A DNA stretch of 64,000 nt, taken from positions 12,463 to 76,462 of the forward strand of contig NW_021833588.1 of NCBI RefSeq assembly GCF_006345805.1. The letters are read 5' to 3'. The notes beneath the pieces were generated by a model. It had not been told where the DNA came from. It saw only the letters and a list, made by a program, of their open reading frames with translations, and searched no databases. Positions 391 through 64,000 of this stretch are shown here, in pieces. The position numbers and the translations under genes were made by a program. Every line of letters begins with the position of its first letter. The first letter of the stretch is position 1. Origin of the DNA: Octopus sinensis. Lineage: Eukaryota.

Positions 391-799
391 AACTTTCAGA
401 TAATTAAATCATTAAACGAAAATACATCTTAAATTATTCCTTCTGAATCCAATTAGGATAAAAAAATAAAATGTAGCAAAAAATTAAGAGAGCACCACAA
501 AGTAAATCAACAGCGTGTTCACACGTGGCTTAATTTATTAGGTATTAGGTTTGCCATTAAAAATTAAGATAATTGACAATAATTAATGAAAAAAACTTTA
601 TTTTTTATTACAAACCAGTTTTGAATGTCAGTAATTATAGTAATTTTGTCACGTTGCATCATGTGGTTCACCAGTTGTTACAACTGTGAAGGCGCACAGA
701 ATTCGAGAAAGCACTCTTCCCAGCTGGAATTATCCAGACGACAATCCCAGGATCTCAGCCCCCGATGGACGAAAGGCTTGAGCATTCTGCTTTCGGGCG

Positions 800-1250
800 A
801 TGTGGAGGAAAATCGAGACCCTATCTAATCATACTCCAACTGAACATCAATGGAATAAGAGGGAAAGTTCTTGAATTACGGACATCCCTCAAAAAACATA
901 ACATCAATGTAGCTGCCTTGCAAGAAACCAGATTAACACCTTCCTCTATTACTCCCTCATTCCCGGGATATAACTGTATCCGCTTATGCCGGTTAAACCG
1001 ACTTGGCGAGGGCCTTCTGTTCATAATCAATACGGTTTGCACTATACGGACTCTACGGATGACCTCAAAACAACAATTCAAGACGGCGTATCAGAAATGT
1101 CTGAAGCACATCACCCCGATTCAAATCTTTACTAAAACTGTTCCCTTTCCGTTCCCCACATGCATTGGGTCCAGAGTTTAACATCGGGAAAAGCTGAGAA
1201 AAATCTTAAGGATTGTTAGAATCACCTAATTAATTACCCTAATTAACTCA
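800..1250 (+). mobile_element. Internally deleted non-LTR retrotransposon: APE/EEP endonuclease N-terminus joined to the element 3' end
   Basis: ILQLNINGI...INVAALQETRL is the EEP motif. The tail at 1105-1240 matches the stub at 30130-30270. Confidence 0.8.
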
Positions 1251-7734: not shown

Positions 7735-8256
7735 TTAAGATTCTGCCATCCGACTCAGGATACGCTTTGTTAGTCGTATCCACGCTCCCCTGTTACGTGC
7801 GAGGCATCTCAGTTCGTCCAGATCATCGGCCGATTTCAGTTTCCTTCCAATCGACGTGAGATCATGGTCGAGCGTAGTCGGTAATGTTGTTCTTTGTCGG
7901 CCCCTATATGCCGTTTTATTTAATGAGCAGAAGTAGGATTCCATGTTCTGATTGGCTGGCGTCATTTCCGAGGCTCTAAGTACATGTCCAAAGAGCATCC
8001 ACTTCGTAAACATCACTTTCTTTGCAATCTCAGATGTATGGGTGATTCTGTAGAGTTCATTATTGGTCATCTTTTTTGGCCAGTGAATTCCCAGGAGTAG
8101 TTGTTTTCTGTGGAAAGAGTTGAGCTGCTCCAGTTCTTTAGCGGTTAGGCCCCAGGTCCCCGCGTTGTAAAGCAAGATTGGTTCGACAAAGGAGTTGTAC
8201 AGCCGAATTCGAAGGCGGGTTCCTATGTACTTGCGCCTCATCCAGATCGTCCACAA
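7735..8256 (-). mobile_element. RTE-like LINE 3' fragment
   Basis: RLYNSFVEPILLYNAGTWG...SFHRKQL...LFGHVLR...GRQRTTLP. Same family as 25575-26661. Confidence 0.85.
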
Positions 8257-8640
8257 ATGCAATAAATTGAGAATATAATTCATATATCAGCAGATTTTTT
8301 CCTTGTAAATTCGAATTCAGATCATTCAGATGAAAAGTAATGTCAACCAGAAATGCAAATTTTTCAAGATCATAAAAGTATGAAGCATCAAAATTTTTAC
8401 TTTCAAAGAATAATCGTACCTTATTGTGCAATAAAAACAATCGTTTCAACATCGATCACATGCTTAGCCATCTACGTTAGACGTTAGATCTCAGTATTTT
8501 GATAACTTCATCAATATTTGGTTTTAAATTGCTGCATATATTTTTCCAAGTGAAATAATTTTCGTTATTTCGTATCCGGCTCTTGTTACATTTTCATTAT
8601 TTTCAATTTTTTAATAAGGCCTTGTTGAATTCGTAAAGTG
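8257..8640 (-). mobile_element. hAT (Buster) transposase fragment
   Basis: FAFLVDITFHLNDLNSNLQGKN motif. Confidence 0.75.
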
Positions 8641-8659
8641 CGCTTCAGTGATTCAATTT

Positions 8660-8749
8660 TATCCTCACGTAGCCTTCAAAAATCCGGGGGTGCCCCAAAA
8701 TCCGAGGGTGCCCCACCCCTGGGGTCTACCCCAATTCGGGGTCGGACTG
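8660..8749. mobile_element. pogo/Tigger-type MITE end
   Basis: Ends CCAATTCGGGGTCGGACTG followed by TA, like the TIR of the pogo element at 51436-52820. Confidence 0.55.
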
Positions 8750-8939
8750 TATTTGAATATATCGGAGAATGATTTGTTTATAGTGAAGTCGAATGTTATA
8801 CTCCTTCATAACAGAGAGATGTTCGTGGCATATTAAACAATAAGCTTTCTGCTTTAATTCATCTTTCGCAAAAAATATTTCATTTCCCATAATTTGTTAA
8901 ATACACGACATTGGCGATCAACTTTTCTTTTCATATTAG

Positions 8940-10788
8940 TAGGGCAACCAATTGCAATTTTTTGCAATTAAATATAATTTAATTAAAATTCGATAAATAA
9001 TAAAGTAATGAATAGACATTAATTTTAATTATATTTTTATTCGATTTAAATTTGCAATTTTTTGCAATTTTTTGTAGTCATTTTACAATTTTTTGCAATT
9101 TTTTTAAATTAAAAAAAAAATTTTTTTATTAAAAAATAATATAATTATAAGTAAAAGATTATTAAAACGTGTTTTAGTTGTTTGTTGTAATGGGTAAAAG
9201 GACAGTGTCACAGAAAATTTCATTTTATGCAAAGAAATTCCCCGAGTTTGTTATTGACAGTGAAGGGAATTTATTTTGCTCCAATTGCTCAACTGTTGTA
9301 CGGTGTGACACAAAATTTTTTGTTGATGCGCACCGTTCTTCAAAAAAACATTTAAAAGCACACAGTATTTCTTTGAATTTAAATTTATAGAATGGACAAA
9401 TTCATCTCAGAGTTCACAAACATTTCTTTCGGCGATAACGGATACTCGAAAGGATTGGGGGATCAAAGTAACACAAGCGTTTTTGGAGGCAAACATACCA
9501 ATTTATAAAATCAGACATCCTTCCCTCATACGGCTTTTTGAGCAGGAAACATATCCTTTGCCATCTGAATCATCTTGCAGGTTAAATGTTAAAGAAATAT
9601 CAAAATATAAAATTAATACCATTCAGACTCATTTACTGTTGTTTTTTTTAAGTTATTCAATAGTGGGGAATGTGTTTTTTTTGTTTGTGATGAAGCCCAA
9701 ATCAATGGAACTCGTTTTTTAATTACTTTGATTGGGAAAATCTCCACTCCAAAAAATCTTCATTTAGTATCGTGTACCAATCTATATTATCCGCCTACTA
9801 CTTCAACAATTTGTGTTGAGGTGGACAAAGTAATAAAGAAATTTTCTATTGAACGTGAAAATTTTATATTATTCGTTACAGATGGGGCGAGATATATGAC
9901 CAGTGGTATATATAAATAAATTTAATTTTAGCTGGGGCATCAATGAAATTGATATACCAAAATCTTTTCCACGTGACTTGCGTGTCACATTTATTGCACA
10001 ACTGTGCTCTAAAGATTAAGGCATACTTCGCAGATGTTGATGAATTGATTTCGTCTATAAAGGCTGCCACAGTCAAAAACAAGAGACGTTTGGAGATGTT
10101 TTCACGAATCGGAAATCCACCCGAAGTTGTGGTTACAAGATGGGGAAGCTGGCTAAAAGCAGCAAAATATTACTCCCAGAATCTTCCAGAAATTATTAAA
10201 ATCGTATCTGAATTTGAAGGAGATGGAGTTTTAATACAAAATGTTTTAGTTTTTAATTATTTTAGGCAAAAAAATCAGTGAATAATCCTACGTTGTTTCC
10301 AAGCTTAACCCAAATCAGTTCAAATTATTTGGGATTAATTGAAATGATTTCAAATACTGAATTGCTTGATTACTCCATTGCAACAGCTTATGGTGATCTA
10401 AACACCCTAGACTTTACATCAGATCCATGCGACATAAAATCCTATATATCAAAAAAGCTTGAGAAATCAGGAATACTAAGTATTCTTGAATTCTCAAATA
10501 AGAATCTATCGCCAGAAGTTTATTCACATCTCAGAAAATGTAGCGCAAGTTCAGCATCTATCGAAAGGGCAATATCTCTTTTGACGAAAATTCTTAGTAA
10601 AGAGAGGAACTTTAAACCTGAAAATGTTCAGGAATATTTGATTTCCTATTACAATAAATAATTTCGTTAATTTTTTGCATAATGTAATGTTTACAATTAA
10701 AAAAAATTATTTTTGCAATTTTTTACAATTTTTAAAATTCATTTTTGCAATTTTTTTTATTAAAAAGTGCAATTTTTTGGTTGCCCTA
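8940..10788 (+). mobile_element. Full-length hAT-superfamily transposon with TIRs and 8-bp TSD
   Basis: TIR TAGGGCAACC...GGTTGCCCTA. TSD CATATTAG at 8932-8939 and 10789-10796. GCAATTTTT subterminal repeats at both ends. Confidence 0.93.
9190..10661 (+). CDS. Intact hAT transposase (456 aa) with four introns of 23-26 nt
   Basis: Exons 9190-9364, 9391-9637, 9664-9905, 9932-10242 and 10266-10661 total 1371 nt with no internal stop. Motifs: N-terminal C2H2 finger (FCSNC...AHRSSKKH), CDEA, VTDGARYM, CVSH (CxxH), TRWGSW, SIERAIS. Confidence 0.85.
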
Positions 10789-10929
10789 CATATTAGGAAT
10801 AGCAACAAACAAAAATTTAATGTTAATGCTGATAAGTTTTTTTCGAATTAAATCTTGCGAAATAGTTTATTTTTTTAATTAAAGTTTTTATTTGAGTTAA
10901 TTATTAAAATATTAATTGAATATCTCGAA

Positions 10930-11528
10930 AGGGGTGCATCGTCCTGGGACGAAGATGTCGCCAGGGGGACAAGTTTTGATGGTTCTTTTCCGGTGAGTAT
11001 TAGGTACCCCCTGAGCGTTTCCAAATGCGTCTGAATTGCAAGATTCAAGCGAGTTGGTGAACCACATAACGCCACGTGTTTCGACTTACTTCCGTTCCCT
11101 TCTGCAGGAGTCAGACGGTCCTAGGGGTAACCCTCGACATGCACCTCTGTTTCTCCCCTCATGTGGACAACCTCCTTCGCAAATGCGAACATAAACTGAA
11201 CATTCTGCGAACTCTATCTGGTATTTGGAAATACGGGTCGCACCCGGTACTGGCGAATATCTACCGCCAGTACTTCGAACCCTGTGTTGCGTACGCTTGC
11301 GGATCATGGGGTCCGCGGCTATCGTGGTCCAACAGGAGGCGAATCGAGGAGGCCCAACAAAGGGCCCTCAGATTAACCGATCGTTGGTCACATGATAGCC
11401 AACGCCCCGGTCCAGCCTCTCTGGAAGACCTCATCAAGGCCTGCCGCCCTGTGCGATCTTGTGTGGGCTCGTGGAAAGACCACCGAGCGAGGATGAGGTC
11501 CCTGGTTGAGTGTATCGGGATCACGTGA
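10930..11528 (+). mobile_element. LINE (Jockey/I-like) RT 3' fragment, 'GIT-stop' family
   Basis: LGVTLDMHLCFSPHV...YRQYFEPCVAYACGSW...IEEAQQRALR...HRARMRSLVECIGIT*. Confidence 0.8.
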
Positions 11529-15196: not shown

Positions 15197-17418
15197 CTAG
15201 CTCGGCAGCTCGCTTCGCTCACCGCGACCTAGCTCCTGCGGAGGGCCTGTTTTATCAAACAACTATAAGTTTATGTAGATGTATAAAACTACCTGGTTTA
15301 ATGAATAAATTTTCTCTTCTGCCTACCCTCGAGCATCCCACATACAGCTGTCCATGTGAAAAGCACTCACTCTCTAAAAATAACCCAACTACCTTTAATG
15401 ACTGTCCCTGGGCCTTGTTTATTGTCATTTCAAAACTCATCCTCAAAGGAAATTGCAGCCTTTTAAATCTAAATGGTAATTCATCAGTAATTATCGGAAT
15501 TCGTAAAATATAAACATCCTCACCTCTATACTTACCTGTTAATATCGTCGCCTCTATTACGTTAGCCATCAAATTTTTGATAACTAACCTCGTTCCGTTG
15601 CATAATTTAGGTGGCGCAAGATTTCGTAATAAAACAACTGGAACGCCTATCTTTAACTTTAAAAGATGATTCGGCATTCCAGAGGGATTTAAGGAGTTTA
15701 AAAATTCAATCCGGTTGAATTTTTAGAAAATAACAAAAAAAATAAAAAAAACAAATAAAAATAAATAATTTAAAAACAAAAAAATAAAAAAAAACTAAAA
15801 AAAAACTTAGCAGCAGCCAAAAAAGCGACACACAAAAAAGATTTAATTAATTACCCTAAGCTGACCGTTTTTCTTCAGCTTCGTTTTTCCTCCTTCGGTT
15901 ATCTATTTAAAAAATTATTTTTGAATAATAAAAAATATTAGGAAAAAAGAGGCATACAGAAAATTAATTCTATCTTTACGAAAAACTTAACTAAATAGTT
16001 AATATTTTTACGCAAATTCTTCTGATTGCGCTGTCAATTGGTGGTAAATTGTGTTAATGATTGTGCTAATGTGGTTTCAACTATCAAAGTGTTTTTCAAA
16101 ATCTGTTAATTGCACACTCTATTCAAGGTCGTGCAATCTTTAATTGCACATTCTGTCAAAGTCAAATATGATAATAGCTTTAATTTTGATTCATGGTCGA
16201 TAATGATATATGCATTTAATTTTAAAGAGAAAATCATAGGATGAATTGAATTTCTTTATCGCGAATAATTGGGAGTTCATCATTGTTAATATTCTCGCTG
16301 TCGTTTTCATCAAGGATATTCTTAATACGTGAGATTTTTGCCTCGGAGGTTTTAATGGACCTCATTATGAATGTCGAGGACATTAACGTTGTTCATTTTA
16401 ATCAAATGCAGAAAATAATTTTTTGCTTTTTTGGCGGGAAGGTTTTAAAGACCTCATCATGTAAGTCGAGGACATCGTAGTTGTTCATTTTAACCAAAAT
16501 GCAGAAAATTTTTTTTTAATTTTTTTTGGGGGGAGGTTTTAAGGACCTCATCATGTAAGTCGAGGACATCGTAGTTGTTCATTTTAACCAAAATGCAGAA
16601 AATTTTTTTTAATTTTTTTTGGGGGGAAGGTTTTAAGGACCTCATCATGTAAGTCGAGGACATCGTAGTTGTTCATTTTAACCAAAATGCAGAAAATTTT
16701 TTTTTAATTTTTTTTGGGGGGAAGGTTTTAAGGACCTCATCATGTAAGTCGAGGACATCGTAGTTGTTCATTTTAACCAAAATGCAGAAAATTTTTTTTT
16801 AATTTTTTTTGGGGGGAAGGTTTTAAGGACCTCATCATGTAAGTCGAGGACATCGTAGTTGTTCATTTTAACCAAAATGCAGAAAATTTTTTTTTAATTT
16901 TTTTTTGGGGGGAAGGTTTTAAGGACCTCATCATGTAAGTCGAGGACATCGTAGTTGTTCATTTTAACCAAAATGCAGAAAATTTTTTTTTAATTTTTTT
17001 TGGGGGGAAGGTTTTAAGGACCTCATCATGTAAGTCGAGGACATCGTAGTTGTTCATTTTAACCAAAATGCAGAAAATTTTTTTTTAATTTTTTTTGGGG
17101 GGAAGGTTTTAAGGACCTCATCATGTAAGTCGAGGACATCGTAGTTGTTCATTTTAACCAAAATGCAGAAAATTTTTTTTAATTTTTTTTGGGGGGAAGG
17201 TTTTAAGGACCTCATCATGTAAGTCGAGGACATCGTAGTTGTTCATTTTAACCAAAATGCAGAAAATTTTTTTTTAATTTTTTTTTGGGGGGAAGGTTTT
17301 AAGGGCCTCATCATGTAAGTCGAGGACATCGTAGTTGTTCATTTTAACCAAAATGCAGAAAATTTTTTTTTGGGGGGAATTTATCTCTACTTTGCCAATT
17401 TGAAGTTGGTGTGCACAC

Positions 17419-23458: not shown

Positions 23459-25126
23459 ATGTCTGGAAACCGAATTTCAAACTATAAAAATATGGGCAAA
23501 ACAGGAGATGTATATTTTAATAAAATCTATAAAGATACTACGTCGGAGAAGAGCCGAAGCTTCTGTAGAACTTAGAAAAATCAAAAAATTAGAATTATTG
23601 GCTAAACGAAGAAACATTCAAGAAACTAAAAGTGATTGCGACATAGATGAAGTTAACTAATAAATGTAATATTTTGTAGATTCAATTTATCGGAAATTTA
23701 CCCCAACTTTCCACAAATGTTCCTCGTCTGGAATTAGTAACAAAAATCCGTCAAAAATTGGTTGACGACGAAACAGCCACAGTATCTGAAATAATCAAAT
23801 CAGAAACAATTCCATTTCTTATTGAATGTTTGACTTGTTTCGAATCGTTGTTTTATGATTTTAAACTTAGTGATTATAAAATACAACTTGAAGCGTCTTG
23901 GGCACTGACGAATATAACTTCAGGGGATCATGAATCGACTAAAGCAGTCGTGGACTGTGGTGTTGTCCCTGTGATTGTTGAACGCATCTCTAAAGTTGAA
24001 AATGTGGATGTCCTTGCACAATATGTGTGGATTCTTTCAAATATAATGGGTTTTTAACATACAATTTATTATTTATTAAGGTGACGGGGACATTGTCAGA
24101 GATTATTGCATTCACTGTGGAGTAGCTGAAGCATTGATTTTTTTAATTGGGAAATTTGACTCAGTTTTTTTTATTTTTGTCAAATTTAAAGATTTTGTTG
24201 TCGGAGATGATTTCCTGGACTATTTCCAACATTTATCGATCTTCCATATCGCCTTTGAATGAAAAAACGGCAAAACAACTTTTCCCATATGCCGAGAAAT
24301 TTTTTTACAACAAAAATCCAGAAATTCGTTCAAATGCTTCCTGGGCACTAACCTTTGCCTCCAATTCATTTGAAAATAAACTCGGGATGTTTACTCCTGG
24401 TATTTAACAATGAATAATACAAAGAATTGATGCAAAGTTTGTTGTCAGTAATGGAAAGTGGAGTAAATTGTGACAATTTTTACTCTGCTCTAAGAACTAT
24501 TGGAAATATTGTTATGGGATCAGATTCTGACACTCAAATGGTGATCGACGAAGGAGGACTGTCTGTTTTTATGAATTTACTTCCCGAAGTTGACAAATCA
24601 TTGAAAGCGGAGGTTGTTTGGATCTTATCGAATGTCGCCGCTGGAAATGTTAGTCAGAAATGGCGACTTCTTCAAAAAAATTGTCATTTATCGATGATTG
24701 ATTTTCTTTATGATGTTGGTTTATATTTCTGGACAAATTTTAGAAAAATGTCAAAATTCAACGAGAAGCTTTGTGGTTTGTTCAAAATTTTTTAAAAGGT
24801 GCGTTGGATCTCAGGTTGTCAGATTTTTATCAGTGGAAATTGTAACTGCAATTTTTGAATTGTTAAAAAAACCTGAATCTGTGCCAGAGATTGTTTTAAT
24901 ATCTCTTAATTCAATCTTTTCGATTTTTAAAGTTATTGGAATTTGTATAAATGTTTAGGCAGCAGAGGAAAATGCAGTGGATATTGACGAATTTATAGAA
25001 TTAATTGAGACGAGTGGGACTTTGGATTTTATCGAGAATTTGCAGATGTCTAAGAATAATGAAATATATCGTGCGTCCATCAAATTTCTTACTAGTTTTT
25101 TTAATCAAGATAATTCATTGAATTAA
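23459..25126 (+). CDS. KPNA: Importin subunit alpha (karyopherin alpha), multi-exon with short introns
   Basis: IBB domain (RRRRAEASVELRK...KRRNI) and ARM repeats (QLEASWALTNITSG, ALRTIGNIVMG, WILSNVAAG). Confidence 0.92.
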
Positions 25127-25574: not shown

Positions 25575-26661
25575 ATTATTATTATTTGCAACATACGTAG
25601 AATCATATTAGTTATAATTTTACTCGTGCAGCATTAAAAACAATCCTTTGAACCAGCCTCCTCCAACCTCCTCTGTCGTGAGCGAGTTTCCTCAGCTCGT
25701 CCAGATCCTCACCACTCCTTAGCCTTTTCTTCACACATTTCAGGTCTCCGTCAAGTGTTTCCGGCAGCGTAACACGTGGACGTCCACGGAAGCTCGATCC
25801 CTCTTTCAGGAAGTAGCCCTCCATTGCTATGTTAGCTGGGGCAAGCATGTCCATTCGTAGAATATGGCCAAATAACCTCCACCGCATATTGACGATTTCC
25901 ACACTCAGAGGGCCAGTTCTGCATCTATTGTATAGCGATTCCTGGTTGATTCTTATAGGCCAGTTCAATCCCAGTAGGGATCTAAGTTGCCTGCGGTGAA
26001 AAGAATCGAGTCCACGTTGTTGAATAGACCTGTCTAGGGCCTTTGACACGGTACGCCGTGGTCTACTCCTCAAAATACTGGAACAATTCCTGGACCCTGA
26101 CTCTGTCAATATGATAAGAGTACTACTATCGAACACAAAGCTCAAGGTGCGGGTCGGCACGGCGTTTTCCCGTGAATTCACGTGCAACGTCGGTACCCCT
26201 CAGGGAGACGCCCTCTCGCCGTTGCTATTCGTGATCTATCTGGAGACGGCACTACGAGACCTTCGAAAATTCTATGCTGGCAATATCGTCGAAATTGTAT
26301 ATGCAGATGACGTCGACTTCGTGTCAGACGACAAATCGGCCTTACTTCGACTCCTTGAAGTGGCACCTGCTGAGCTGAACAGATGGTTCCTTAAAATGAA
26401 CGTTGGAAAAACCGACATCGTTGAAATCATGAGGATGGAGAGCAGCTCAAGTGAAGCCTGGCGCAAAACGAACAAACTTGGTTCTCTACTTGGGGACGGC
26501 CATGATATTGTCAGAAGAAAGGCTCTCGCTTGGGCCACGATGAACAAGATAAAGAAAGAGTGGATCGGCAAACGACGACTCTGTACGTCACTTCGTCTGA
26601 GGATGTATGAAGCCTTTGTCAAACCAATCCTGACATATAATTCGGCGACCTGGGGAATGTC
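25575..26661 (-). mobile_element. 5'-truncated, 5'-inverted RTE-like LINE insertion
   Basis: RT segment on + (DLSRAFD, QGDALSP, YADD, 26024-26661) and C-terminus plus (TAA)n tail on - (25575-26029). TSD TATTAGTTATT at 25564-25574 and 26662-26672. Confidence 0.88.
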
Positions 26662-27440
26662 TATTAGTTATTTAAGAAAATAATATTTAGTCTTTTTAAC
26701 GTCAGAATTTTTTTCGAATTCATTAATTTTTTATTTATTTGTTGCGAGGTAAGCAAAAAACTGTTGACCGTTCCACCAAGTAGTAAGATAAAATGTTTTA
26801 TTGTTATTACAACCATGGAGACAATAAAGGAATAAATCAGAGTCAATATTTAAATGAAAATTTAATTTAACAAGCAGGATATTTTCAATAACAAGAATAA
26901 AATAACTCTGATCAAAATTGTTACTACTTCCCAGGAGAAAGTTAAACACGTTGAAGTTAAATAATTTTACTAGCATGAGTTATAAGTGAACTTTAGCTTT
27001 TTACGACTGTCAGGAAAAATTATCTCGTTGGTGAATTTGGATTCAGTTTTCTCAAAATGGTACAACATTATATAAGGTAAGCTATCTATTGAATAATCAA
27101 ATAAAAACTATATTTAATTAGTTATCCTGAAAAAGACTTTTGAAAGCGTGTTAATTGAACACAATCATAGGATGAGAGTATTTTATAAAAAGTATTCCTC
27201 AGCTTTCAAACTACTTATGGAACGGGACATATCTTTGAATTTTAACACATTTGTGTTGACTGTTCTGATGTGGGGATGATGAATAAGGAGAAGTTGGCTG
27301 CAAGATCTTGACATTAAAAAAGAAATATCATCAACGATTTTAGCTAAAATTCTTTATTAGATATTTTGATTAATAAGGTAAGAATATATCTTGTATTAAA
27401 AATGTAAAATGAGTAAAAAGAGCTTTATTTTAATTAAAAT

Positions 27441-28837
27441 CTAGTAAATAAACGGAATTATTTTATATGGGACTGCATCACAATACAAATTCCAAAATTT
27501 TTCATATTTGAGTCTGCACTTCTTCTCATCCCGGAAACTGCGATGTAAGAGCAAAACAAATAGAAAAATAAAATAAGAATATGGAAGTAAACTCCCAAAT
27601 CCACACGGCAGTGTCCAACAAAGTGCAGAACACAACTCGGCAAAATAATTAAAATGCCGACTCAAACTCCACCACCCACTGGCCAACAAAAGCGAGTGAC
27701 GAACTTGATTGTCGGTTGTGGTATAAGCCGCTTTTATAAACTTTGGTTTTTTTCTCCAAATAAAACAATTTCCATTTGTTTCTCTTACTTTTTTCTTTTG
27801 CCAATCAATATCATAATTAACAAAAATAGCACCAACTCCAAAAACTAAGAGACAGATTGAACAAAACCAGCCGAGATATACAGGTCTGGATACAAGATAC
27901 ATTCCACTCTAACTATTACGTAAAACAATACTAACCAGAGTGTACAGCGTAGGGACAAATACTAGACAACCCCAACATATATAAAACCCTGCTCGATCAA
28001 CTGCGATATCAATAGTCCTCATGTATCCAATCTCCCACCAAAAAAACTTGCTGATATAACACAACTGAAGAAATGAATTCACAAACATGGAATCAACAAA
28101 TCCATGTAACTCCCAACTCTTGATTGCAAAAATAAACACAAGTAGTCCCCAAACCATCATACCAAAACGACAGTTTGTGAATACCTAACCAACTTAACCA
28201 ATAAAAGAAATAAACTTTAATATCAATCCCCCATATCTTCGGATAAAGCTCAGTCCCCCAATAATAGTCAAATATCCAATTTCCAGATGGTCCACAGTCT
28301 TTATTGGTCGGGAAGTAAATTCCCTTGTAGAGAAGAATTAGGCAGAAGATCAAAGCAATGAAGTTGAGACTGAAATAAATTTGTTGAAGGTTGTCATAAA
28401 TTATTGTTACAGACAGTCCATTGGACTTTAAAAAATATTGTAGTCCAAAAAATGAGCAAATAGTAACAATATATTGCTTGAATCCATTATCCTTAAAGTA
28501 AGGTAAAAATCCACTTTCTGATGTATTTCCTGGTTCAAGTTTTCCTAAAATATAAATTTTCTCACATCGAACCGGGCAATATTCTCATTAAAACAAGACT
28601 GAACAGAATGTACCCAAAAATAATACAAAATGAGATTAATGTAAATGGCGGTCTTTGCCAAATTAACCACATCCAATCAATTCCATATTGTTTTATTAGA
28701 TCTGAAAATGTTCCATTTGTTTCAAAATTAATAAAACTAGAATATATGTCACCTAAATACCAGAGAGTTAAAGCAAATATGGGCGATGTAACAATAAGTA
28801 TACAAGGAACTGTTGATCTCCACAACCAATCACGCAT
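27441..28837 (-). CDS. DHCR7: 7-dehydrocholesterol reductase (ERG4/ERG24 family), multi-exon
   Basis: DYYWGTELYP, VFTNCRFGMM, DIAVDRAGFYICWGCLVFVP, LLASGWWSLSRHFNYFAE, RDEKKCRLKY..W..YC..VPYKIIP. Confidence 0.9.
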
Positions 28838-38479: not shown

Positions 38480-39410
38480 TTTAGAACCTTTTTACAAAAT
38501 GGAGAATTAAGCTAACATTCAACCAGCACATAATCGGAGGCGTCAAAATGGAAAGGGGTATACTCCAGGGTGATTCCTTGTCACCTCAAATTTTTGCAAT
38601 GGACCCCCTCAGTCGAATTCTGAACGCAAAGTACCCAAAAGTTATTATGGATAATCAAGACCACGGTTTTATTACATACACAACAAACCAACTACTTTTC
38701 ATAGATGACCTAAAAATATTTTCACGAAAAGAAAATACAATGATGAGTATGATGAACGAGGTAAATAATTTTTTCGCAGCCGCCGGACTAAAAAATGTCG
38801 AAAAGTCCGCAACTAATTTGGGTGACCTTTGGTTGAAAGCTAAATTGCTTGATGGGATAGATGGTTACAGATACCTCGGAGTGGTAGAAGAATAAATTAA
38901 GTGAAGTATTGAAAAGCGAAATACTGAACACATTCTTTGGATAATTAAAAAAGAAGATCGTCAATCTCTTGAAGACAAAATTAAACTCTTACAACTTATT
39001 TAAAGCCATAAATAAGCACGCATTATCCTTCCACAACTACTACATTGGGCTTGTCAATATTTAGCTAACAGAATTTGAACAGATTGACATAAATGTGTGC
39101 AAGATTTTTGTACAACATCGAATTAACCTGAAACCTGCAAATAAAGAAAAACTTTACCTCCCAAGAGGCCAACTTGGAGAGGACTCGTATCCACTGTCCT
39201 AAAGCATCCAAGAAACTGGGACCTTGATTTGAACTTGCTGAGGGAAGTGCAGAAGAACCGCTTGATTTACTAAATAAGGAAAAAATCATTGCATGCAATT
39301 CTCAACGAGTATTTAAATGATCTCAACGTCTATATTGATGAGTTCCTTTCATTGGAGGGGCTTCTGTGTCTAATACAGGACCGTAGCCTATTTTTCGACA
39401 ATGCTGGAAC
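38480..39410 (+). mobile_element. R4-like non-LTR RT pseudogene
   Basis: RGILQGDSLSP...LLFIDDLKIF...YRYLGVVE, with multiple stops and frameshifts. Confidence 0.85.
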
Positions 39411-43676: not shown

Positions 43677-46408
43677 TCTTAATAATAAAATGGTATGGTG
43701 TGTGTCTGTCTGTCTGTCTGTCTGTGTGTGCACACCAACTTCAAATTGGCAATACGATGTCCTCGACTTACATGATAAGGTCCTTAAAACCTTCCCCCCA
43801 AAAAAAATTAAAAAAAAATTTTCTGCATTTTGGTTAAAATGAACAACTACGATGTCCTCGACTTACATGATGAGGTCCTTAAAACCTTCCCCCCAAAAAA
43901 ATCAAAAAAAAATTTTCTGCATTTTGGTTAAAATGAACAACTACGATGTCCTCGACTTACATGATGAGGTCCTTAAAACCTTCCCCCCCAAAAAAAATTA
44001 AAAAAAAATTTTCTGCATTTTGGTTAAAATGAACAACTACGATGTCCTCGACTTACATAATGAGGTCCTTAAAACCTTCCCCCCCAAAAAAATCAAAAAA
44101 AAATTTTCTTTCTGCATTTTGGTTAAAATGAACAACTACGATGTCCTCGACTTACATGATGAGGTCCTTAAAACCTTCCCCCCAAAAAAAATTAAAAAAA
44201 AATTTTCTGCATTTTGGTTAAAATGAACAACTACGATGTCCTCGACTTACATGATGAGGTCCTTAAAACCTTCCCCCCAAAAAAAATTAAAAAAAAATTT
44301 CTGCATTTTGGTTAAAATGAACAACTACGATGTCCTCGACTTACATGATGAGGTCCTTAAAACCTTCCCCCCAAAAAAAATTAAAAAAAAAATTTCTGCA
44401 TTTTGGTTAAAATAAACAACTACGATGTCCTCGACTTACATAATGAGGTCCTTAAAACCTTCCCCCCAAAAAAAATTAAAAAAAAAAATTTCTGCATTTT
44501 GGTTAAAATGAACAACTACGATGTCCTCGACTTACATGATGAGGTCCTTAAAACCTTCCCCCCAAAAAAAATTAAAAAAAAATTTTCTGCATTTTGGTTA
44601 AAATGAACAACTACGATGTCCTGGACTTACATGATGAGGTCCTTAAAACCTTCCCCCCAAAAAATTAAAAAAAAATTTTCTGCATTTTGGTTAAAATGAA
44701 CAACTACGATGTCCTCGACTTACATGATGAGGTCCTTAAAACCTTCCCCCCAAAAAAAATTAAAAAAAATTTTTCTGCATTTTGGTTAAAATGAACAACT
44801 ACGATGTCCTCGACTTACATGATGAGGTCCTTAAAACCTTTCCGCCAAAAAATCAAAAAATTATTTTCTGCATTTGATTAAAATGAACAACGTTAATGTC
44901 CTCGACATTCATGATGAGGTCCATTAAAAATCTCACGTATTAAGAATATCCTTGATGAAAACGACAGCGAGAATATTAACAATGATGAACTCCCAATTAT
45001 TCGCGATAAAGAAATTCAATTCATCTTATGATTTTCTCTTTAAAATTAAATGCATATACCATTCAAAATTAAACCTATTATCATATTTGACTTTGACAGA
45101 ATGTGCAATTACAGATTGCACGACCTTGAATAGAGTGTGCAATTAACAGATTTTGAAAAACACTTTGATAGTTGAAACCACATTAGCAAAATCATTAACA
45201 CAATTTACCACCAATTGACAGCGCAATCAGAAGAATTTGCGTAAAAATATTAACTATTTAGTTAAGTTTTTCGTAAAGATAAAATTTATTTTCGGTATGC
45301 CTCTTTTCCTAAACTTTTTTATTATTCAAAAATAATTTTTTCAATAGATAACTGAAGGAGGGAAGACGACCTTAAGAAAAGAAGTTTTTCGTAAAGATAG
45401 AATTTATTTTCTGTATGCCTCTTTTTTCCTAATATTTTTTATTATTCAAAAATAATTTTTTAAATAGATAACCGAAGGAGGAAAAACGAAGCTGAAGAAA
45501 AAACGGTCAGCTTAAGGTAATTAAATCTTTTTTGTGTGTCGCTTTTTTGGCTGCTGCTACTCTGCCTGCCGCATCTCCGGCTGCCCCATCTCCGCCAGTG
45601 GTTTGTCTAATCAAGGTCACTAAGCTAAATCTCCGGACTATAAAGGCTCTTAAGCATTATCTTAACTGGCTGTTAAAAAAATTAGACAGGTTGTTGCCGT
45701 GGCGGCAGAGATTTTTTTTGTTTATACTTTTTTACAAATTTTTAAAGTTTTTTCATTTCTTTTGTTTTTAAATTATTTATTTTTATTTGTTTTTTTTTAT
45801 TTTTTTTGTTATTTTCTACAAATTCAACCGGATTGAATTTTTAAACTCCTTAGATCCCTCTGGAATGCCGAATCATCTTTTAAAGTTAAAGATAGGCGTT
45901 TCAGTGGTTTTATTACAAAATCTTGCGCCACCTAAATTATGCAACGGAACGAGGTTAGTTATCAAAAATTTGATGGCTAACGTAATAGAGGCGACGATAT
46001 TCACAGGTAAGTATAGAGGTGAGGATGTTTATATTCCACGAATTCCGATAATTTCTGATGAATTACCATTTAGATTTAAAAGGCTGCAATTTCCTTTGAG
46101 GATGAGTTTTGCAATGACAATAAACAAGGCCCAGGGACAGTCATTAAAGGTAGTTGGGTTATTTTTAGAGAGTGAGTGCTTTTCACATGGACAGCTGTAT
46201 GTGGGATGCTCGAGGGTAGGCAGAAGAGAAAATTTATTCATATATGCCAAGGAAGGACAAACGACAAACATCGTTTATCAACAGGCGATAGAATAGGGTT
46301 ACATTAAACCAGGTAGTTTTATACATCTACATAAACTTATAGTTGTTTGATGAAACAGGCCCTCCGCAGGAGCTAGGTCGCGGTGAGCGAAGCGAGCTGC
46401 CGAGCTAG
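43677..46408 (+). mobile_element. Non-autonomous Helitron, copy B
   Basis: A|TCTTAATAATAAAATGG...GCCGAGCTAG|T. The helicase C-terminus [14 protein letters not shown]...[10 protein letters not shown] (about 45830-46296) keeps a natural stop. Confidence 0.92.
43750..44880. repeat. Tandem array, about 95-bp unit, 12 copies plus one degenerate monomer, inside Helitron B
   Basis: ACGATGTCCTCGACTTACAT recurs about every 93-99 bp. Confidence 0.95.
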
Positions 46409-46740: not shown

Positions 46741-47149
46741 AAAATTTGCAGATATTGCATTTTTTAACAACTTTGCGAATGATCTGTCGCTTCAATATAA
46801 AAAATCTTAGGCTTCCGAAGCATTATGTCCACAATGATTGGCTTCATGAATTTCACGTGCAATTATTTTTATCTCTTCTAAGCTGTTTACATTTTCTAGG
46901 ACGTTTACATTTCTAAGATATCGTTTATTATTATTAAAAGCACTCCCGAGAAGTCATAAAACTAATTAAGCTTCCCTTGTGCCGCGTGAACAACAATACT
47001 ATCCCACAACCTTCTTCAGGTGTCTCTAATTTTTGCCAATTCTCTCAGGTTGTCGAGTCAGTTCCAGAGATGTCATTGAGGTGGGTCGAAAATATTGAGG
47101 TGGGTCGAAAATATTTCAATTCTCTCAGGTTGCCAATTCTCCCAGTTCG

Positions 47150-47760
47150 TGGAGACATCGTCCTTTGATACTGTCCAGCAGATATTGTCGTGGGACAAGC
47201 GCTGCCAGCTAGGCATATCAAGGAACGATGCAGGCGATATTTCCGAAGCGGAGATTCTGGCAGCGATCTCCCGAAGTATGAACACTGCGGCGGGTCTGGA
47301 TCGGATCCCTATTGCCATCTTTAAGAAGGCCCCGCCGTTGTTGATCACCGCCTTACAAGTCTTATTTAGCGGGAGCTTGCGACTTGGGATGATTCCCTCT
47401 AGGTGGAAAGTGGCTGAGGTAATCCTTATCGAAAAACCCAGGATGCCTCATGATGTCCACGGGCGATACATGCCTATTTCCTTGCTTCCCGCTGTATTTG
47501 AAATTTTAGAAAGGATCATGCTCCGAAGGGAGGGTCGTTCGTGTGGAGACTGCTTATGGAAGGTGTCCTCTGAGATGAAGTGCGCCCTCCAGAAGGAAGA
47601 GTGTGGTATGTTAGTTAGTCTTGACATTGAAAAGGCCTTCGACTCGGTGTGGGGAGCTCTCAGAAACCCAGAAATTGTCCCTCAAAGGCCTCCCTGAGGT
47701 CTTAGAGAAGATAATGTCTAGGTGGCAGGTAAGGCGGTAAGTCTTAGTTTGCGGCTGAGA
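47150..47760 (+). mobile_element. LINE RT N-terminal fragment with internal deletions
   Basis: TAAGLDRIP, WKVAEVILIEKP, RYMPISLL, SLDIEKAFDSVW. Confidence 0.85.
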
Positions 47761-49771: not shown

Positions 49772-50215
49772 CTATTTATTTAAGTGATGCAACAGTTTTT
49801 CAATGGATCGTACCGATCCCTCCAGCTCTGGGGTTAGTTTGGATTTTAAGTCCAAGCCATGTGCCAGTTTAATGGCATATCTCCGCGTTTTTCTCAAAAG
49901 ATCAATATGTTTCTTTCCTTCGCAGCTTCCGAACCATCCTTGAGATCCATAGATCAGGAAGGGTTCTATACACGCAGAGTATACGTATAAGAACGTTTCC
50001 GGTTTCAGCTGGAATCGCATCAGAGCTTTCAACATTTGGGTAGCCTTGTTCTTTCTCTTCCTTATATACATCTTGAATGAACCAGTTGCATCCACAACTA
50101 TTCCGAGGTATTTAAGATCATCCACGGGTTTTATCGCTCCGGTGTTAATACAAACAACAGGTTTCCTTCTCCTTTCATTAATCCTGCAAACAGTGTTAAC
50201 GGCAGCGAGCGACAA
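49772..50215 (-). mobile_element. LINE RT C-terminal fragment
   Basis: DDLKYLGIVVD...VYSACIEPFLIYGSQGW. Confidence 0.8.
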
Positions 50216-50679
50216 ATTTAAATACGAGTCATTAAGTTTTCAAACCTAATAAACTCTAATTTCTGCCCTTTGGACAAAAAAACAAGCGTGTCGTTTCGTT
50301 TGAGCTACTCTTAAATACTTCAAACAACAAAATGTATATATCTCATAGACTTGCTTAAAGAATGACAAATAATTACTGAATTAAGTATTATATAATAAGA
50401 ATCGTTATACTTTTTAATAGAATACATTTCAAAGAAATGTTTTGATACATTTTCCAATCAAAAAAGTATGCTTTTCTGTTACTAAAAACCTTCACTATAA
50501 TGTGTCATTTTGTAAGCAAGTCTTCTAGTCTCCTTAGAAATCCCCAACATATTTAGTGATTAGAGACCATCTTTTCTGATATTTGAGACTCCAGGTCACA
50601 ATGGGGGGAAACTAAATGACTGACAACTCAAAGATGAGAAAGCCAAGATATTAAGAAAAATTTATTTAAAGAAAAAGTG

Positions 50680-51416
50680 TTAATTAGTTTCTAAACTTGC
50701 CAGGTCTCTGCTATCTTCTTGTATTTCTCTGCCATCTTTGGACTCCAGTATCACCATACCAGTGGGTGAAAATCCTTTTACATAGTATATTCTTGTATCA
50801 TGGTGCTCATTTAGAGACCACTTCCGCGTCCCTTTATTTTTGTCTGTTTTAATTCTTCTAACAACTTTTTCCCCAATTTTAAAAACAGAGGTGTCATTCT
50901 TCCACATGTTTTTTTTAGCATTTTTTTTTCCGCCGCATCCGAGTACTGGACAGCCTTTGTCCTTGTACTACTGACGGTAAACCATTTCCAAGCCATATAA
51001 TTCTTTACGTCATTTTTTTCATAGGAATTTAGGCGAATAGGAGATTCTTTTTCATAGGCGAATAGGAGATTAAGTTCTTCTTCGCTATAGTGTATGTTTG
51101 CAGACTGATCGGCATTTTCTCCAAACATAATTCTGAACGGTGCAAACGACGTAGTGGAATGCACCGTTGAGTTATATGAACTGGTTATCCGGTCTATAAT
51201 CGAAATCCATTTATAATCGAGGTTTTCAGACAAAAAGGTGGAGGACAACATATATTTCAGAGATTGGTTTAGTCTTTCCACCTGCCCCTGCACCCAAGGG
51301 CACCTTGCACGACCTTTCACGTGCTTTATCTTGTACTCATCGCACAATCGGGAAATCCTTTCGTTGACAAATTCCTTCCCATTGTCCGTATGAAGAATTA
51401 ATGGTTTTCCAAACAT
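50680..51416 (-). mobile_element. Ginger/KRBA2-like DDE integrase, 5'-disrupted
   Basis: PLILHTDNGKEF...GRARCPWVQGQVERLNQSL...YNSTVHSTTSFAPF. Cut at its 5' side by a pogo insertion. Confidence 0.8.
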
Positions 51417-51435
51417 TAATATTATTTTATTTATA

Positions 51436-63926: not shown

Positions 63927-64000
63927 TTGATTTGATCAGTTGAATTGAAAAAAGTTATGAAATGATCCATTGACTTATTTCGCTGTAGAAATACATTTTG

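What the first reader, a model, noticed from the sequence alone, without database searches (positions are those of the whole stretch)
8940..10788. Apparently intact hAT transposon whose transposase carries four host-style nano-introns
The ORF track shows five broken fragments. Removing GT-AG introns at 9365-9390 (26 nt), 9638-9663 (26), 9906-9931 (26) and 10243-10265 (23) gives one 456-aa ORF. It keeps the zinc finger, the putative D/D/E residues (CDEA, TDGA, SIER), CxxH and RW motifs, inside perfect TIRs with an exact 8-bp TSD. The introns have the same size and composition as host-gene introns, and none is a multiple of 3 in length, so only the host's ultra-short-intron spliceosome could yield transposase. 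Inference: this is a potentially active element adapted to the host's intron regime. It could offer splicing-based control of transposition, a barrier to horizontal spread, or a tractable test of whether tiny introns are gained de novo in mobile DNA.
Basis: partly seen in the sequence, partly recalled or inferred. Interest (0 to 1): 0.85.

Follow-up and report, generated by a model that had tools for sequence, protein, structure and literature searches.

The report
hAT transposon with four tiny introns
This is a young, multi-copy hAT "cut-and-paste" transposon whose transposase gene is split by four 23-26-base introns of the kind its host uses; the host appears to be a dicyemid-like parasite whose contigs sit inside an octopus genome assembly, and relatives show the introns were added to an originally intronless gene.

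Summary
The element spans 8940-10788. It has 12-bp perfect TIRs, an exact 8-bp TSD, and four GT-AG segments (26, 26, 26, 23 nt) whose removal gives a 456-aa ORF.

The segments behave as real introns:
- Nineteen intronless homologues from other sources, aligned to the DNA, pick the same four segments, and their protein alignment is ungapped at introns 2-4.
- Two divergent sister lineages in the same genome carry introns at the same sites and phases as introns 2 and 3, with different sequences.
- Coding sequence between two intron-bearing lineages has dN/dS of about 0.14.

A host gene in the window has 24-31-nt introns of the same style.

The family looks recently active. It has at least 19 full-length copies at 98-100% identity, different TSDs fitting nTnATnAn, deletion derivatives, and paralogous empty sites. 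The fold of a homologue matches Hermes transposase.

Two corrections apply. Splicing itself is not shown, because no RNA data were reachable. The host is not the assembly's main organism, which is an octopus-like mollusc, but a compact nano-intron animal, most likely a dicyemid.

hAT transposases with introns (Ac, Tol2) and dicyemid nano-introns are both already known. This is therefore a new member of a known kind, and a useful intron-gain series.

The parts
8932..8939 (.). Left copy of the 8-bp target-site duplication, CATATTAG
   Evidence: Identical to 10789-10796. The joined flanks carrying one TSD copy match >=37 uninterrupted paralogous repeat copies.
8940..8951 (+). Left terminal inverted repeat, TAGGGCAACCAA
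   Evidence: Perfect reverse complement of 10777-10788. The same TIR bounds the other copies. It starts TAGGG, as do related elements L031 and L051.
8952..9189 (+). 5' subterminal region with four TGCAATTTTT repeats (8953, 9053, 9063, 9094), an A/T tract and the untranslated leader
   Evidence: 7 of the window's 10 exact TGCAATTTTT matches lie in the two subterminal regions; 1.26 are expected by chance in the whole window. Repeat families D1/D2.
9190..9364 (+). Exon 1 (aa 1-58 plus 1 nt): CxxC...HxxxxxH zinc finger
   Evidence: C30, C33, H48 and H54 are invariant.
9365..9390 (+). Intron 1, 26 nt, phase 1, GTATTT...TTATAG
   Evidence: Chosen by 14/19 homologue-guided alignments. It lies in a length-variable linker, so it is the least securely placed. 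Retention gives a 66-aa product.
9391..9637 (+). Exon 2 (aa 59-141)
9638..9663 (+). Intron 2, 26 nt, phase 2, GTTGTT...CAATAG
   Evidence: Chosen by 17/19 alignments. Introns at the same site and phase occur in L045 (24 nt) and L051/L056 (24 nt).
9664..9905 (+). Exon 3 (aa 141-222): first and second catalytic Asp (D150, D214)
   Evidence: Matches Pfam DUF659 over residues 132-263.
9906..9931 (+). Intron 3, 26 nt, phase 1, GTATAT...TTTTAG
   Evidence: Chosen by 18/19 alignments. The junction ARYMTS|AG is identical in intronless P0001. Introns at the same site and phase occur in L045 (24 nt) and L051/L056 (25 nt).
9932..10242 (+). Exon 4 (aa 222-325): CxxH and RW motifs, start of the helical insertion domain
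   Evidence: Aligns to Hermes CSSHLL and TRW.
10243..10265 (+). Intron 4, 23 nt, phase 0, GTTTTA...TTTTAG
   Evidence: Chosen by 19/19 alignments. Not seen in L051/L056.
10266..10661 (+). Exon 5 (aa 326-456 plus TAA): catalytic Glu (E425 in SIER) and C-terminal hAT-like region
   Evidence: Weak Dimer_Tnp_hAT match over residues 417-451.
10662..10776 (+). 3' subterminal region with three TGCAATTTTT repeats (10714, 10746, 10768)
10777..10788 (-). Right terminal inverted repeat, TTGGTTGCCCTA
10789..10796 (.). Right copy of the TSD, CATATTAG
8748..8939 (.). Left half of the ~326-bp interspersed repeat into which the element inserted (right half is 10797-10930)
   Evidence: Joined flanks, query positions 109-434, match >=37 loci contiguously at ~92% identity.
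10797..10930 (.). Right half of the interrupted ~326-bp repeat

Best explanation
Window 8940-10788 is an autonomous, recently active hAT-superfamily DNA transposon. It belongs to a compact ~455-aa, DUF659-type lineage. It resides in the genome of an animal with ultra-short introns, most likely a dicyemid whose contigs are mixed into an octopus assembly. Its transposase gene is interrupted by four spliceosomal GT-AG introns of 26, 26, 26 and 23 nt. These were inserted into an ancestrally intronless gene. Each is out of frame, so a full 456-aa transposase carrying the D150/D214/E425 triad can be made only from fully spliced mRNA. Retaining any one intron truncates the protein before E425. The transposase would then bind the TGCAATTTTT subterminal repeats and the TAGGGCAACCAA ends, excise the element and reinsert it at nTnATnAn targets, making 8-bp duplications. 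SHOWN: element anatomy, insertion into a repeat, copy number and identity, intron positions relative to intronless homologues, shared intron sites in sister lineages, purifying selection, host introns of the same size, and hAT fold of a homologue. INFERRED: that the introns are actually spliced, that the element is active now, that the repeats are the binding sites, and that the host is a dicyemid.
For: Anatomy and ORF.
Introns are insertions, not disrupted coding sequence. About 60 homologues at 35-47% identity are single ORFs of similar length. Three of them were verified as contiguous in DNA. The alignment is ungapped at junctions 2-4. Nineteen homologues pick the same four GT-AG segments.
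Intron sites 2 and 3 recur at identical position and phase, with different sequence and length, in the 60%-identical L045 and the 35%-identical L051/L056. The latter are themselves TIR/TSD-bounded elements.
REF and L045 are sisters with 100% SH-aLRT support. They differ with dN/dS = 0.14 over 264 codons, so protein was made while the introns were present.
In the intact copy L005, intron 2 is 1 nt shorter and intron 3 has a substitution, while the spliced protein is unchanged.
The host importin-alpha gene in the window has introns of 25, 24, 31, 28, 25, 29 and 27 nt with GT(A/T)...AG ends, consistent across 10 guide proteins. Other host genes also show 20-30-nt introns.
Activity: at least 19 full-length copies at 98-100% identity plus internal-deletion derivatives. 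Twelve distinct perfect TSDs give nTnATnAn. Six of 19 copies have an intact spliced ORF. Empty paralogous sites exist.
hAT identity: all 20 aligned family members match DUF659. Motif-level alignment to Hermes. AlphaFold model of homologue P0009 has pLDDT 90.7, and its 12 best PDB matches are all Hermes transposase (E 2e-9, TM 0.52-0.56).
Host identity. Chromosome-size contigs carry molluscan haemocyanin arrays and a long-intron ERG4 gene. All hAT hits lie on other, mostly small contigs. The window's importin is 82% identical to a partial protein labelled Octopus sinensis, but <=32% identical to every true orthologue, including a cephalopod one. Among animals, introns under 30 nt are reported only in myxobolids and Dicyema japonicum (PMC13644364). 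D. japonicum lives in O. sinensis and has GC 36.7% and 49% repeats (PMC6736024).
Against: No RNA evidence was found. No protein derived from a spliced transcript exists in the searched database.
Thirteen of 19 full-length copies have frameshifts in the spliced ORF. However, 1-nt indels outnumber substitutions 65 to 28 in exons, which points to long-read assembly error.
Sequence-only evidence for hAT membership is weak for this protein. DUF659 scores 34.2 bits against a cut-off of 34.7. Dimer_Tnp_hAT has E 0.17. Hermes by phmmer has E 0.04. A family profile did not retrieve Hermes from PDB sequences.
Intron 1 lies in a length-variable linker and was chosen by only 14 of 19 guides.
The dicyemid assignment is circumstantial; no dicyemid sequence could be compared.
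Confidence: 0.75

Rival explanations
1. The introns are real and were spliced in the past, but the family is now extinct or silenced. The near-identical copies would be relics of one past burst, and no functional transposase is made today.
For: Thirteen of 19 full-length copies carry frameshifts in the spliced ORF. No transcript-derived protein was found.
Against: Six copies at five loci keep an intact ORF with 0-2 amino-acid changes. Substitutions run at about 1.3 per kb in exons. Most frameshifts are 1-nt deletions typical of assembly error. Deletion derivatives with shared breakpoints occur at several loci.
Confidence: 0.2
2. The nano-intron host is not a dicyemid. It would be another compact-genome animal present in the sample, for example a different parasite lineage with ultra-short introns.
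For: No dicyemid sequence could be compared directly. Myxobolid myxozoans also have 22-27-nt introns and can be repeat-rich (PMC13644364; bioRxiv 10.1101/2024.02.09.579586).
Against: The main genome is a mollusc labelled Octopus sinensis. Dicyemids are renal parasites of cephalopods, and D. japonicum was isolated from O. sinensis with matching GC and repeat content (PMC6736024). Known myxozoan hosts are fish, other vertebrates, annelids and bryozoans (PMC13644364).
Confidence: 0.1
3. The four segments are not introns but small disruptive insertions or indel scars, and the element is a dead pseudogene copy that spread by other means.
For: The raw ORF track shows five broken fragments. Splicing is unproven.
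Against: All four segments start GT and end AG, and all fall in the host's intron size range. Exact removal restores an ungapped alignment to intronless homologues at junctions 2-4. Two of the sites are shared with divergent lineages whose intron sequences differ. dN/dS is 0.14. Every copy keeps all four segments.
Confidence: 0.03
4. The element belongs to the octopus genome itself, and the short segments are unrelated to any special spliceosome.
For: The contig is part of an assembly whose annotation labels neighbouring genes as Octopus sinensis.
Against: None of about 195 DNA or protein hits lies on chromosome-size contigs. The window's own genes are compact with 24-31-nt introns, whereas the mollusc ERG4 gene spreads its exons over 8 kb. 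The window's importin is <=32% identical to molluscan importins.
Confidence: 0.03
5. The segments are removed at the DNA level, by programmed elimination in somatic nuclei, rather than by RNA splicing.
For: None from this analysis. It was considered only because short internal eliminated sequences of about 26 nt exist in some eukaryotes (own knowledge: Paramecium IESs).
Against: The boundaries are GT...AG, not TA...TA. They are the same style as introns at sites in a conserved host gene. Every assembled copy contains the segments.
Confidence: 0.02

Closest known systems
Ac/Ds of maize (hAT superfamily; own knowledge)
   Same: Autonomous hAT element with short TIRs, 8-bp TSD, subterminal transposase-binding repeats, a transposase gene with four introns, and internal-deletion non-autonomous derivatives.
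   Different: Ac introns are of ordinary plant size (tens to hundreds of nt). The Ac protein is about 800 aa and the element 4.6 kb. Here the element is 1.85 kb, the protein 456 aa, and the introns 23-26 nt, below the size most spliceosomes handle.
Hermes transposase of Musca domestica (PDB 2bw3, 4d1q, 8edg)
   Same: Same fold. The model of a 45%-identical homologue matches Hermes over its full length. The D, D, CxxH, RW and E motifs align. The target consensus is nTnnnnAn.
   Different: Hermes is intronless and longer (612 aa) and has a classical BED finger. Sequence identity is only 12-14%. The family here has a short CxxC...HxxxxxH finger that weakly resembles the U1-C type.
Intronless DUF659-type hAT elements from other sources (P0001-P0069; e.g. 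L031 from GCA_022599525.1)
   Same: 35-47% identity over the full length, the same protein size, a TAGGGCAA... TIR and about 1.85 kb element length in L031.
   Different: All are single uninterrupted ORFs. The window element has four introns.
Drosophila P element third-intron control (own knowledge)
   Same: It works alike in principle: full-length transposase requires removal of an intron, and intron retention yields truncated N-terminal products.
   Different: It is a different superfamily. P-element control is tissue-specific and experimentally shown. Here no regulation has been shown; there is only an obligatory dependence on splicing.
Host nano-introns of Dicyema japonicum and myxobolid myxozoans (PMC6736024, PMC13644364)
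   Same: 20-30-nt AT-rich GT-AG introns with weak splice-site motifs and A residues upstream of the AG.
   Different: Those were described in host genes. In the papers read here, DNA transposons of these animals and intron gain in them were not described.

Membership tests
hAT superfamily DNA transposon | 8-bp target-site duplication | tested here: met
   Exact 8-bp TSD in the window and at 12 distinct sites among the copies. Sister lineage L051/L056 also has exact 8-bp TSDs.
hAT superfamily DNA transposon | Target consensus nTnnnnAn (Ac-type; own knowledge of the family) | tested here: met
   T at position 2 in 10/12 sites and A at position 7 in 11/12, plus invariant central AT.
hAT superfamily DNA transposon | Short TIRs beginning (C/T)A(A/G)NG | tested here: met
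   12-bp perfect TIR TAGGGCAACCAA. Relatives have TAGGGCAATTT.
hAT superfamily DNA transposon | DDE RNase-H-like catalytic core interrupted by a helical insertion domain, with CxxH and RW motifs | tested here: met
   D150 (>=90% of sequences), D214, E425, C238, H241, R291 and W292 are conserved. Motif alignment to Hermes. The AF2 model of homologue P0009 has Hermes chains as its top 12 PDB matches, E 2e-9, TM 0.52-0.56. The window protein itself could not be folded.
hAT superfamily DNA transposon | C-terminal hAT dimerisation domain (Pfam PF05699) | tested here: inconclusive
   E 0.17 (12.1 bits against a cut-off of 21.4) for the window protein. Four of 20 family members match, with best E 0.0017. 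The fold match to Hermes spans the C-terminus.
hAT superfamily DNA transposon | N-terminal BED-type zinc finger | tested here: inconclusive
   A conserved CxxC...HxxxxxH finger is present, but there is no Pfam zf-BED hit. A family profile weakly matches the U1-C zinc finger, E 0.008.
Spliceosomal (U2-type GT-AG) introns | GT...AG boundaries, with removal restoring frame and colinearity with intronless homologues | tested here: met
Spliceosomal (U2-type GT-AG) introns | Size and composition within the host's own intron distribution | tested here: met
   TE introns are 23-26 nt with GC 8-19%. Host importin-alpha introns are 24-31 nt with GC 12-32% and the same GTA/GTT...AG ends.
Spliceosomal (U2-type GT-AG) introns | Position and phase conserved in diverged paralogues while the intron sequence diverges | tested here: met
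   Sites aa141 (phase 2) and aa222 (phase 1) are shared by REF, L045 and L051/L056. Introns 1 and 4 could not be assessed in the truncated L045.
Spliceosomal (U2-type GT-AG) introns | Exon-exon junctions observed in RNA | not testable with these tools
   No RNA data were available. Searches for proteins from spliced transcripts found nothing above 55% identity.
Autonomous, currently active element | Intact transposase ORF plus intact ends in several near-identical copies at different sites | tested here: met
   Six of 19 full-length copies are intact after splicing. Identity is 98-100%, with distinct TSDs.
Autonomous, currently active element | Demonstrated excision or insertion polymorphism | not testable with these tools
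   Only paralogous empty sites in a repeat family were shown, not allelic empty sites.
Dicyemid (Dicyemida) genome as host | Ultra-short introns (<~30 nt) in conserved animal genes, in a compact, repeat-rich genome | tested here: met
   The window holds a POU-homeobox gene and many TEs. Literature: PMC13644364 and PMC6736024.
Dicyemid (Dicyemida) genome as host | Association with a cephalopod | tested here: met
   Molluscan haemocyanin arrays lie on chromosome-size contigs. The nearest named protein is labelled Octopus sinensis.
Dicyemid (Dicyemida) genome as host | Sequence identity to a reference dicyemid genome or rRNA | not testable with these tools

The most novel reading that the evidence does not exclude
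DNA transposons resident in this nano-intron genome accumulate host-type introns stepwise after invasion. On this reading, the co-resident hAT lineages form a dated series of de novo intron gains in mobile DNA. One young lineage has none, one lineage has one, L051/L056 has at least three (aa141, aa222, aa351), and this element has four. A fragment of this element's sister lineage (L045) shows two of the four sites. The out-of-frame 23-26-nt introns would then confine the element to hosts whose spliceosome can remove such introns. That would be a natural host-range lock, and it would give a tractable way to measure intron-gain rate and mechanism.
Probability: 0.3. Interest if true: 0.7.

Novelty: new member of a known kind. 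Interest (0 to 1): 0.5.

Why it matters
1. Well-documented recent gains of spliceosomal introns are rare. This gene is demonstrably intronless in dozens of relatives, yet it carries 0, 1, at least 3 or 4 nano-introns in different lineages of one genome. Multi-copy families allow the gains to be dated.
2. Because each intron is out of frame and far below the usual animal size limit, the element is a natural reporter for ultra-short-intron splicing. Genomic and cDNA transposase clones can be compared in heterologous cells.
3. On the practical side, a public octopus assembly appears to contain megabases of a second animal's genome. At least one of that animal's genes is annotated as an octopus protein. 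This matters for anyone using that annotation, and it offers long-read contigs for a poorly sampled phylum.

Tried and rejected
For the same reason the structure was predicted for homologue P0009 rather than the window protein.
The ~50%-identical lineage could therefore not be read. It lies on C900, C8845, C12461, C12762 and C12137 and shows a single frame over aa 221-456, that is, a break at the intron-3 site and none at the intron-4 site. Its intron set is inferred only from the hit table.
- An ORF-maximising dynamic-programming finder that used no homology recovered introns 1 and 3 exactly. It chose in-frame alternative donors for introns 2 and 4 and added a spurious 5' intron. I replaced it with a homologue-guided spliced aligner.
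- A family-profile search of PDB sequences did not retrieve Hermes. It retrieved only a weak U1-C zinc-finger match.
- A search for proteins from spliced transcripts, using a 242-aa query across junctions 2-4, found nothing above 55% identity.
- A test for intron origin by tandem duplication of flanking exon sequence found no score above the shuffled 95th percentile.
- A ciliate or reassigned-stop-codon explanation was considered at the start and rejected. The exons contain no in-frame TAA, TAG or TGA, the segments shift the frame, and the window encodes animal genes such as a POU-homeobox gene.
- A myxozoan host was considered and downgraded once the main genome proved to be molluscan.
- A literature look-up of homologue assembly accessions linked JAHZIM only to a sponge-microbiome study.
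Full report
**1. The observation**

- A 12-bp perfect terminal inverted repeat, TAGGGCAACCAA, lies at 8940-8951, and its reverse complement lies at 10777-10788.
- It is flanked by an exact 8-bp direct repeat, CATATTAG, at 8932-8939 and 10789-10796.
- Under the standard code the interior shows five ORF fragments on the + strand, in frames 1, 0, 2, 1 and 0.
- I started at ATG 9190 and removed 9365-9390, 9638-9663, 9906-9931 and 10243-10265. This gives a 1371-nt CDS of 456 aa ending in TAA at 10659-10661.
- All four removed segments begin GT and end AG. They are 26, 26, 26 and 23 nt long with GC of 8-19%, against 35% in the exons.
- The exons contain no in-frame TAA, TAG or TGA, so a reassigned stop codon does not explain the breaks.
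- The subterminal regions hold 7 of the window's 10 exact copies of TGCAATTTTT. Only 1.26 are expected by chance in the whole window.

**2. Are the four segments introns or scars?**

- A protein search with the spliced product returned 70 relatives. About 60 are at 35-47% identity, and most are 450-465 aa.
- I looked up three of them in their source DNA. Each translates as one uninterrupted ORF: P0003 (1374 nt), P0041 (1269 nt) and P0044 (1362 nt). The family is therefore ancestrally intronless.
- In a 20-sequence alignment the spliced protein runs through junctions 2, 3 and 4 without a gap.
  - At junction 3 the sequence ARYMTS|AG is identical to P0001.
  - Junction 1 lies in a length-variable linker behind the zinc finger.
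- I wrote a protein-to-DNA spliced aligner that allows GT-AG introns of 15-70 nt, frameshifts and codon gaps. I ran 19 intronless homologues against the raw element. They chose:
  - 10243-10265 in 19 of 19 cases;
  - 9906-9931 in 18 of 19;
  - 9638-9663 in 17 of 19;
  - 9365-9390 in 14 of 19.
- The homologues have no residues left over to align with the segments. The segments are therefore insertions relative to the ancestral gene, not coding sequence damaged by indels.

**3. Evidence from the same genome**

*Copies of this family*
- The window is C10059:12463-76462 of a 2.72-Gb assembly.
- A DNA search found at least 19 full-length copies at 98-100% identity, plus many partial or internally deleted ones. 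The deleted ones include 1-722 joined to 1157-1849, and 1-742 joined to 1717-1849, the latter at four loci.
- Twelve distinct perfect 8-bp TSDs give the consensus nTnATnAn, which fits the Ac-type hAT target nTnnnnAn.
- All 19 full-length copies keep all four introns. Six copies (L001, L002, L003, L005, L006, L009; five loci) have an intact spliced ORF with 0-2 amino-acid changes.
- In the remaining copies, 1-nt indels outnumber substitutions 65 to 28 in exons. That pattern is typical of uncorrected long-read contigs, so the true number of intact copies is probably higher.
- Copy L005 has a 1-nt deletion in intron 2 and a substitution in intron 3, yet its spliced protein is unchanged.

*Empty-site test*
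- I joined 300 nt of each flank, keeping one TSD copy. Positions 109-434 of this query, which span the junction at 300/301, match at least 37 other loci contiguously at about 92% identity.
- The element therefore inserted into one copy of a ~326-bp interspersed repeat.

**4. Other hAT lineages in the genome**

A six-frame protein search, followed by spliced alignment, found several lineages:

| Lineage | Identity to this element | Introns found | Other features |
|---|---|---|---|
| L045 (C12603), a truncated fragment covering aa 66-330 | ~60% | 24 nt at aa141 phase 2; 24 nt at aa222 phase 1 | Same sites and phases as introns 2 and 3, different sequences |
| L051/L056 | ~35% | aa141 phase 2 (24 nt); aa222 phase 1 (25 nt); aa351 phase 1 (24 nt) | Complete elements of 1781 and 1776 bp, TIR TAGGGCAATTT, exact TSDs |
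| L046b/L052 | ~38% | One 31-nt intron at aa144 phase 0 | |
| L040, L041, L043, L046a, L054, L055, L057 | 34-40% | None | Young lineage of nearly identical copies |

- L046a (intronless) and L046b (one intron) lie within 100 nt of each other on one contig. Intron-bearing and intronless lineages therefore share one genome.
- In a maximum-likelihood tree, this element and L045 are sisters with 100% SH-aLRT support. L051 joins them only weakly (82%), together with the external intronless sequences P0002, P0011 and P0013.
- Between this element and L045, dN/dS is 0.14 over 264 codons, with dS 1.8, which is near saturation.
- Both lineages carry introns 2 and 3, most simply by descent, and in this element both introns shift the frame. 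The coding sequence has therefore been kept functional while interrupted. This is indirect but real evidence that the introns are removed from the mRNA.

**5. Are they host-style, and who is the host?**

*Host introns*
- The window encodes animal genes:
  - a POU-homeobox gene (63348-63935, minus strand);
  - an importin-alpha gene (~23460-25120);
  - a sterol reductase (27441-28584, minus strand);
  - an EFL1-like GTPase (57600-60300, minus strand).
- Ten importin-alpha proteins from other animals, aligned to the DNA, agree on introns of 25, 24, 31, 28, 25, 29 and 27 nt. These have GTA/GTT...AG ends and GC of 12-32%.
- The sterol reductase and the GTPase also show frame changes bridged by 20-30-nt GT-AG segments.
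- The four transposase introns therefore fall inside the host's own intron distribution.

*The assembly is mixed*
- Chromosome-size contigs carry arrays of molluscan haemocyanin units: C5 beyond 90 Mb, and C28.
- Another chromosome-size contig, C11 beyond 59 Mb, carries an ERG4-family gene with exons spread over 8 kb.
- None of the roughly 195 DNA or protein hits for this hAT lies on such contigs.
- The window's importin is 82% identical to a partial protein labelled Octopus sinensis. It is at most 32% identical to every genuine importin-alpha, including one from the cephalopod Argonauta.

*Most likely host*
- Among animals, introns shorter than 30 nt are reported only for myxobolid myxozoans and Dicyema japonicum (PMC13644364).
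- D. japonicum is a renal parasite isolated from O. sinensis. Its genome is 67.5 Mb, GC 36.7%, 49% repeats, mean intron 38 bp (PMC6736024).
- The most likely host of the element is therefore a dicyemid whose contigs were co-assembled with the octopus.
- This is an inference. No dicyemid reference could be compared.

**6. What it is and how it most likely works**

*hAT membership*
- Membership rests on several points:
  - the TIR, TSD and target features;
  - conserved D150, D214, C238xxH241, R291-W292 and E425;
  - a motif-level alignment to Hermes;
  - all 20 aligned family members matching Pfam DUF659;
  - an AlphaFold model of the 45%-identical homologue P0009 (pLDDT 90.7), whose twelve best PDB matches are all Hermes transposase (E 2e-9, TM 0.52-0.56).
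- Sequence-only evidence is weak for the window protein itself. DUF659 scores 34.2 bits against a cut-off of 34.7, and Dimer_Tnp_hAT has E 0.17.
- There is no Pfam BED hit. The N-terminal finger weakly resembles the U1-C type.

*Mechanism (inferred)*
- The element is transcribed, and the host spliceosome removes all four nano-introns.
- The 456-aa transposase binds the subterminal repeats and ends, then cuts and pastes the element.
- Retaining any single intron gives products of 66, 168, 225 or 337 aa, all of which lack E425.
- Transposase output therefore depends strictly on complete splicing.
- Whether this dependence is used for regulation, or limits horizontal spread, is untested.

**7. 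Comparison with what is known, and novelty**

- hAT transposase genes with introns are long known, for example Ac with four and Tol2 with three (own knowledge).
- Splicing-dependent transposase production is classic for the P element (own knowledge).
- Dicyemid nano-introns are published.
- What is new is threefold:
  - the combination of a hAT element with nano-introns;
  - the clear polarity, with intronless relatives everywhere else;
  - the graded intron content of co-resident lineages.
- The papers I could search did not describe DNA transposons of dicyemids.
- I file it as a new member of a known kind, with moderate interest as an intron-gain system and as a flag for assembly contamination.

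**8. Limits**

- There is no RNA evidence.
- The ~50%-identical lineage could not be read.
- The window protein itself could not be folded or searched against the large representative library.
- The grouping of L051 with this element's clade is weakly supported. A single origin of introns 2 and 3 across all three lineages is therefore likely but not shown.

Noticed in passing
Whole window (G000:C10059), compared with G000:C5, C11, C13 and C28: The assembly appears to hold two animals. One is a mollusc on chromosome-size contigs, with haemocyanin arrays and long introns. The other is a compact nano-intron animal on many smaller contigs, including this window. At least one gene of the second animal is annotated publicly as 'importin subunit alpha-1-like, partial [Octopus sinensis]' (P0071).
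   Followed up: partly
window 8748-8939 plus 10797-10930: The hAT sits inside a ~326-bp interspersed repeat with at least 37 other copies at ~92% identity on many contigs. A further conserved 38-nt piece lies about 70 nt upstream (8640-8677). The repeat was not classified.
   Followed up: partly
G000:C4561:28508-30964 compared with window 8640-11096: Contig C4561 carries the same insertion with identical flanks and the same TSD at 100% identity. It is probably a haplotig or a duplicated contig of the same locus.
   Followed up: no
L040, L041, L043, L046 (1501-2790), L054, L055, L057: A second, intronless hAT lineage has near-identical copies, is 34-40% identical to this one, and has TTAGGTCATAT subterminal repeats. 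In L046 it lies within 100 nt of a one-intron lineage copy. It may be a more recent arrival in the genome.
   Followed up: partly
G000:C900:14877-15584, C8845:10669-11376, C12461:399163-399870, C12762:405554-406261, C12137:9850-10557: A ~50%-identical lineage reads in one frame over aa 221-456, starting exactly at the intron-3 site and crossing the intron-4 site without a break. On C12137 and C12762 an upstream piece ends at about aa 138-139, near the intron-2 site. The DNA could not be fetched.
   Followed up: no
window 15255-15722 (-) and 45772-46296 (+): Two near-identical ORF fragments have the look of a Helitron/PIF1-type helicase C-terminus (KAQGQSL...[10 protein letters not shown]). This reading is from the sequence only and was not run against a family library.
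   Followed up: no
window 690-1181, 7735-8286 (-), 11070-11528, 25612-26683, 38485-38895, 47080-47697, 49772-50239 (-), 50811-51476 (-), 56220-56750: The window is dense with other mobile-element remnants. By eye these are several non-LTR reverse-transcriptase and endonuclease fragments, a retroviral-type integrase ORF and a Tc1/mariner DDE ORF. This fits the ~49% repeat content reported for D. japonicum. They were not run against family libraries.
   Followed up: no
window 52859-54070 (-), GC 0.49: A 403-aa open frame lies in the most GC-rich kilobase of the window. It has a Cys/His-rich stretch (CRHC...CSSC...HLYC...CPSC) resembling a PHD-like finger. It may be part of a retroelement. Not analysed.
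   Followed up: no
window 63348-63935 (-): A POU-specific domain plus homeodomain is encoded in one 195-aa frame. This is a developmental transcription factor gene in the nano-intron genome.
   Followed up: no
L001-L019 (all full-length copies): Among the copies, single-base deletions greatly outnumber substitutions (65 to 28 in exons). This suggests that these low-coverage contigs carry uncorrected long-read indel errors, which would also damage gene models of the second organism.
   Followed up: partly
residues 30-95 of the family profile (window about 9277-9500): The N-terminal CxxC...HxxxxxH finger of this hAT family matches the zinc finger of spliceosomal protein U1-C (PDB 3cw1_L) at E 0.008, rather than a BED finger. 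This may be mere similarity between zinc-finger classes.
   Followed up: no
window 23652-23679 and about 24808-24811: In the host importin-alpha gene, two frame changes were not resolved as GT-AG introns by the homologue-guided aligner. One is probably the 28-nt GT-AG segment 23652-23679 found by the ORF-based finder. The other may be an assembly indel or a non-canonical intron.
   Followed up: no
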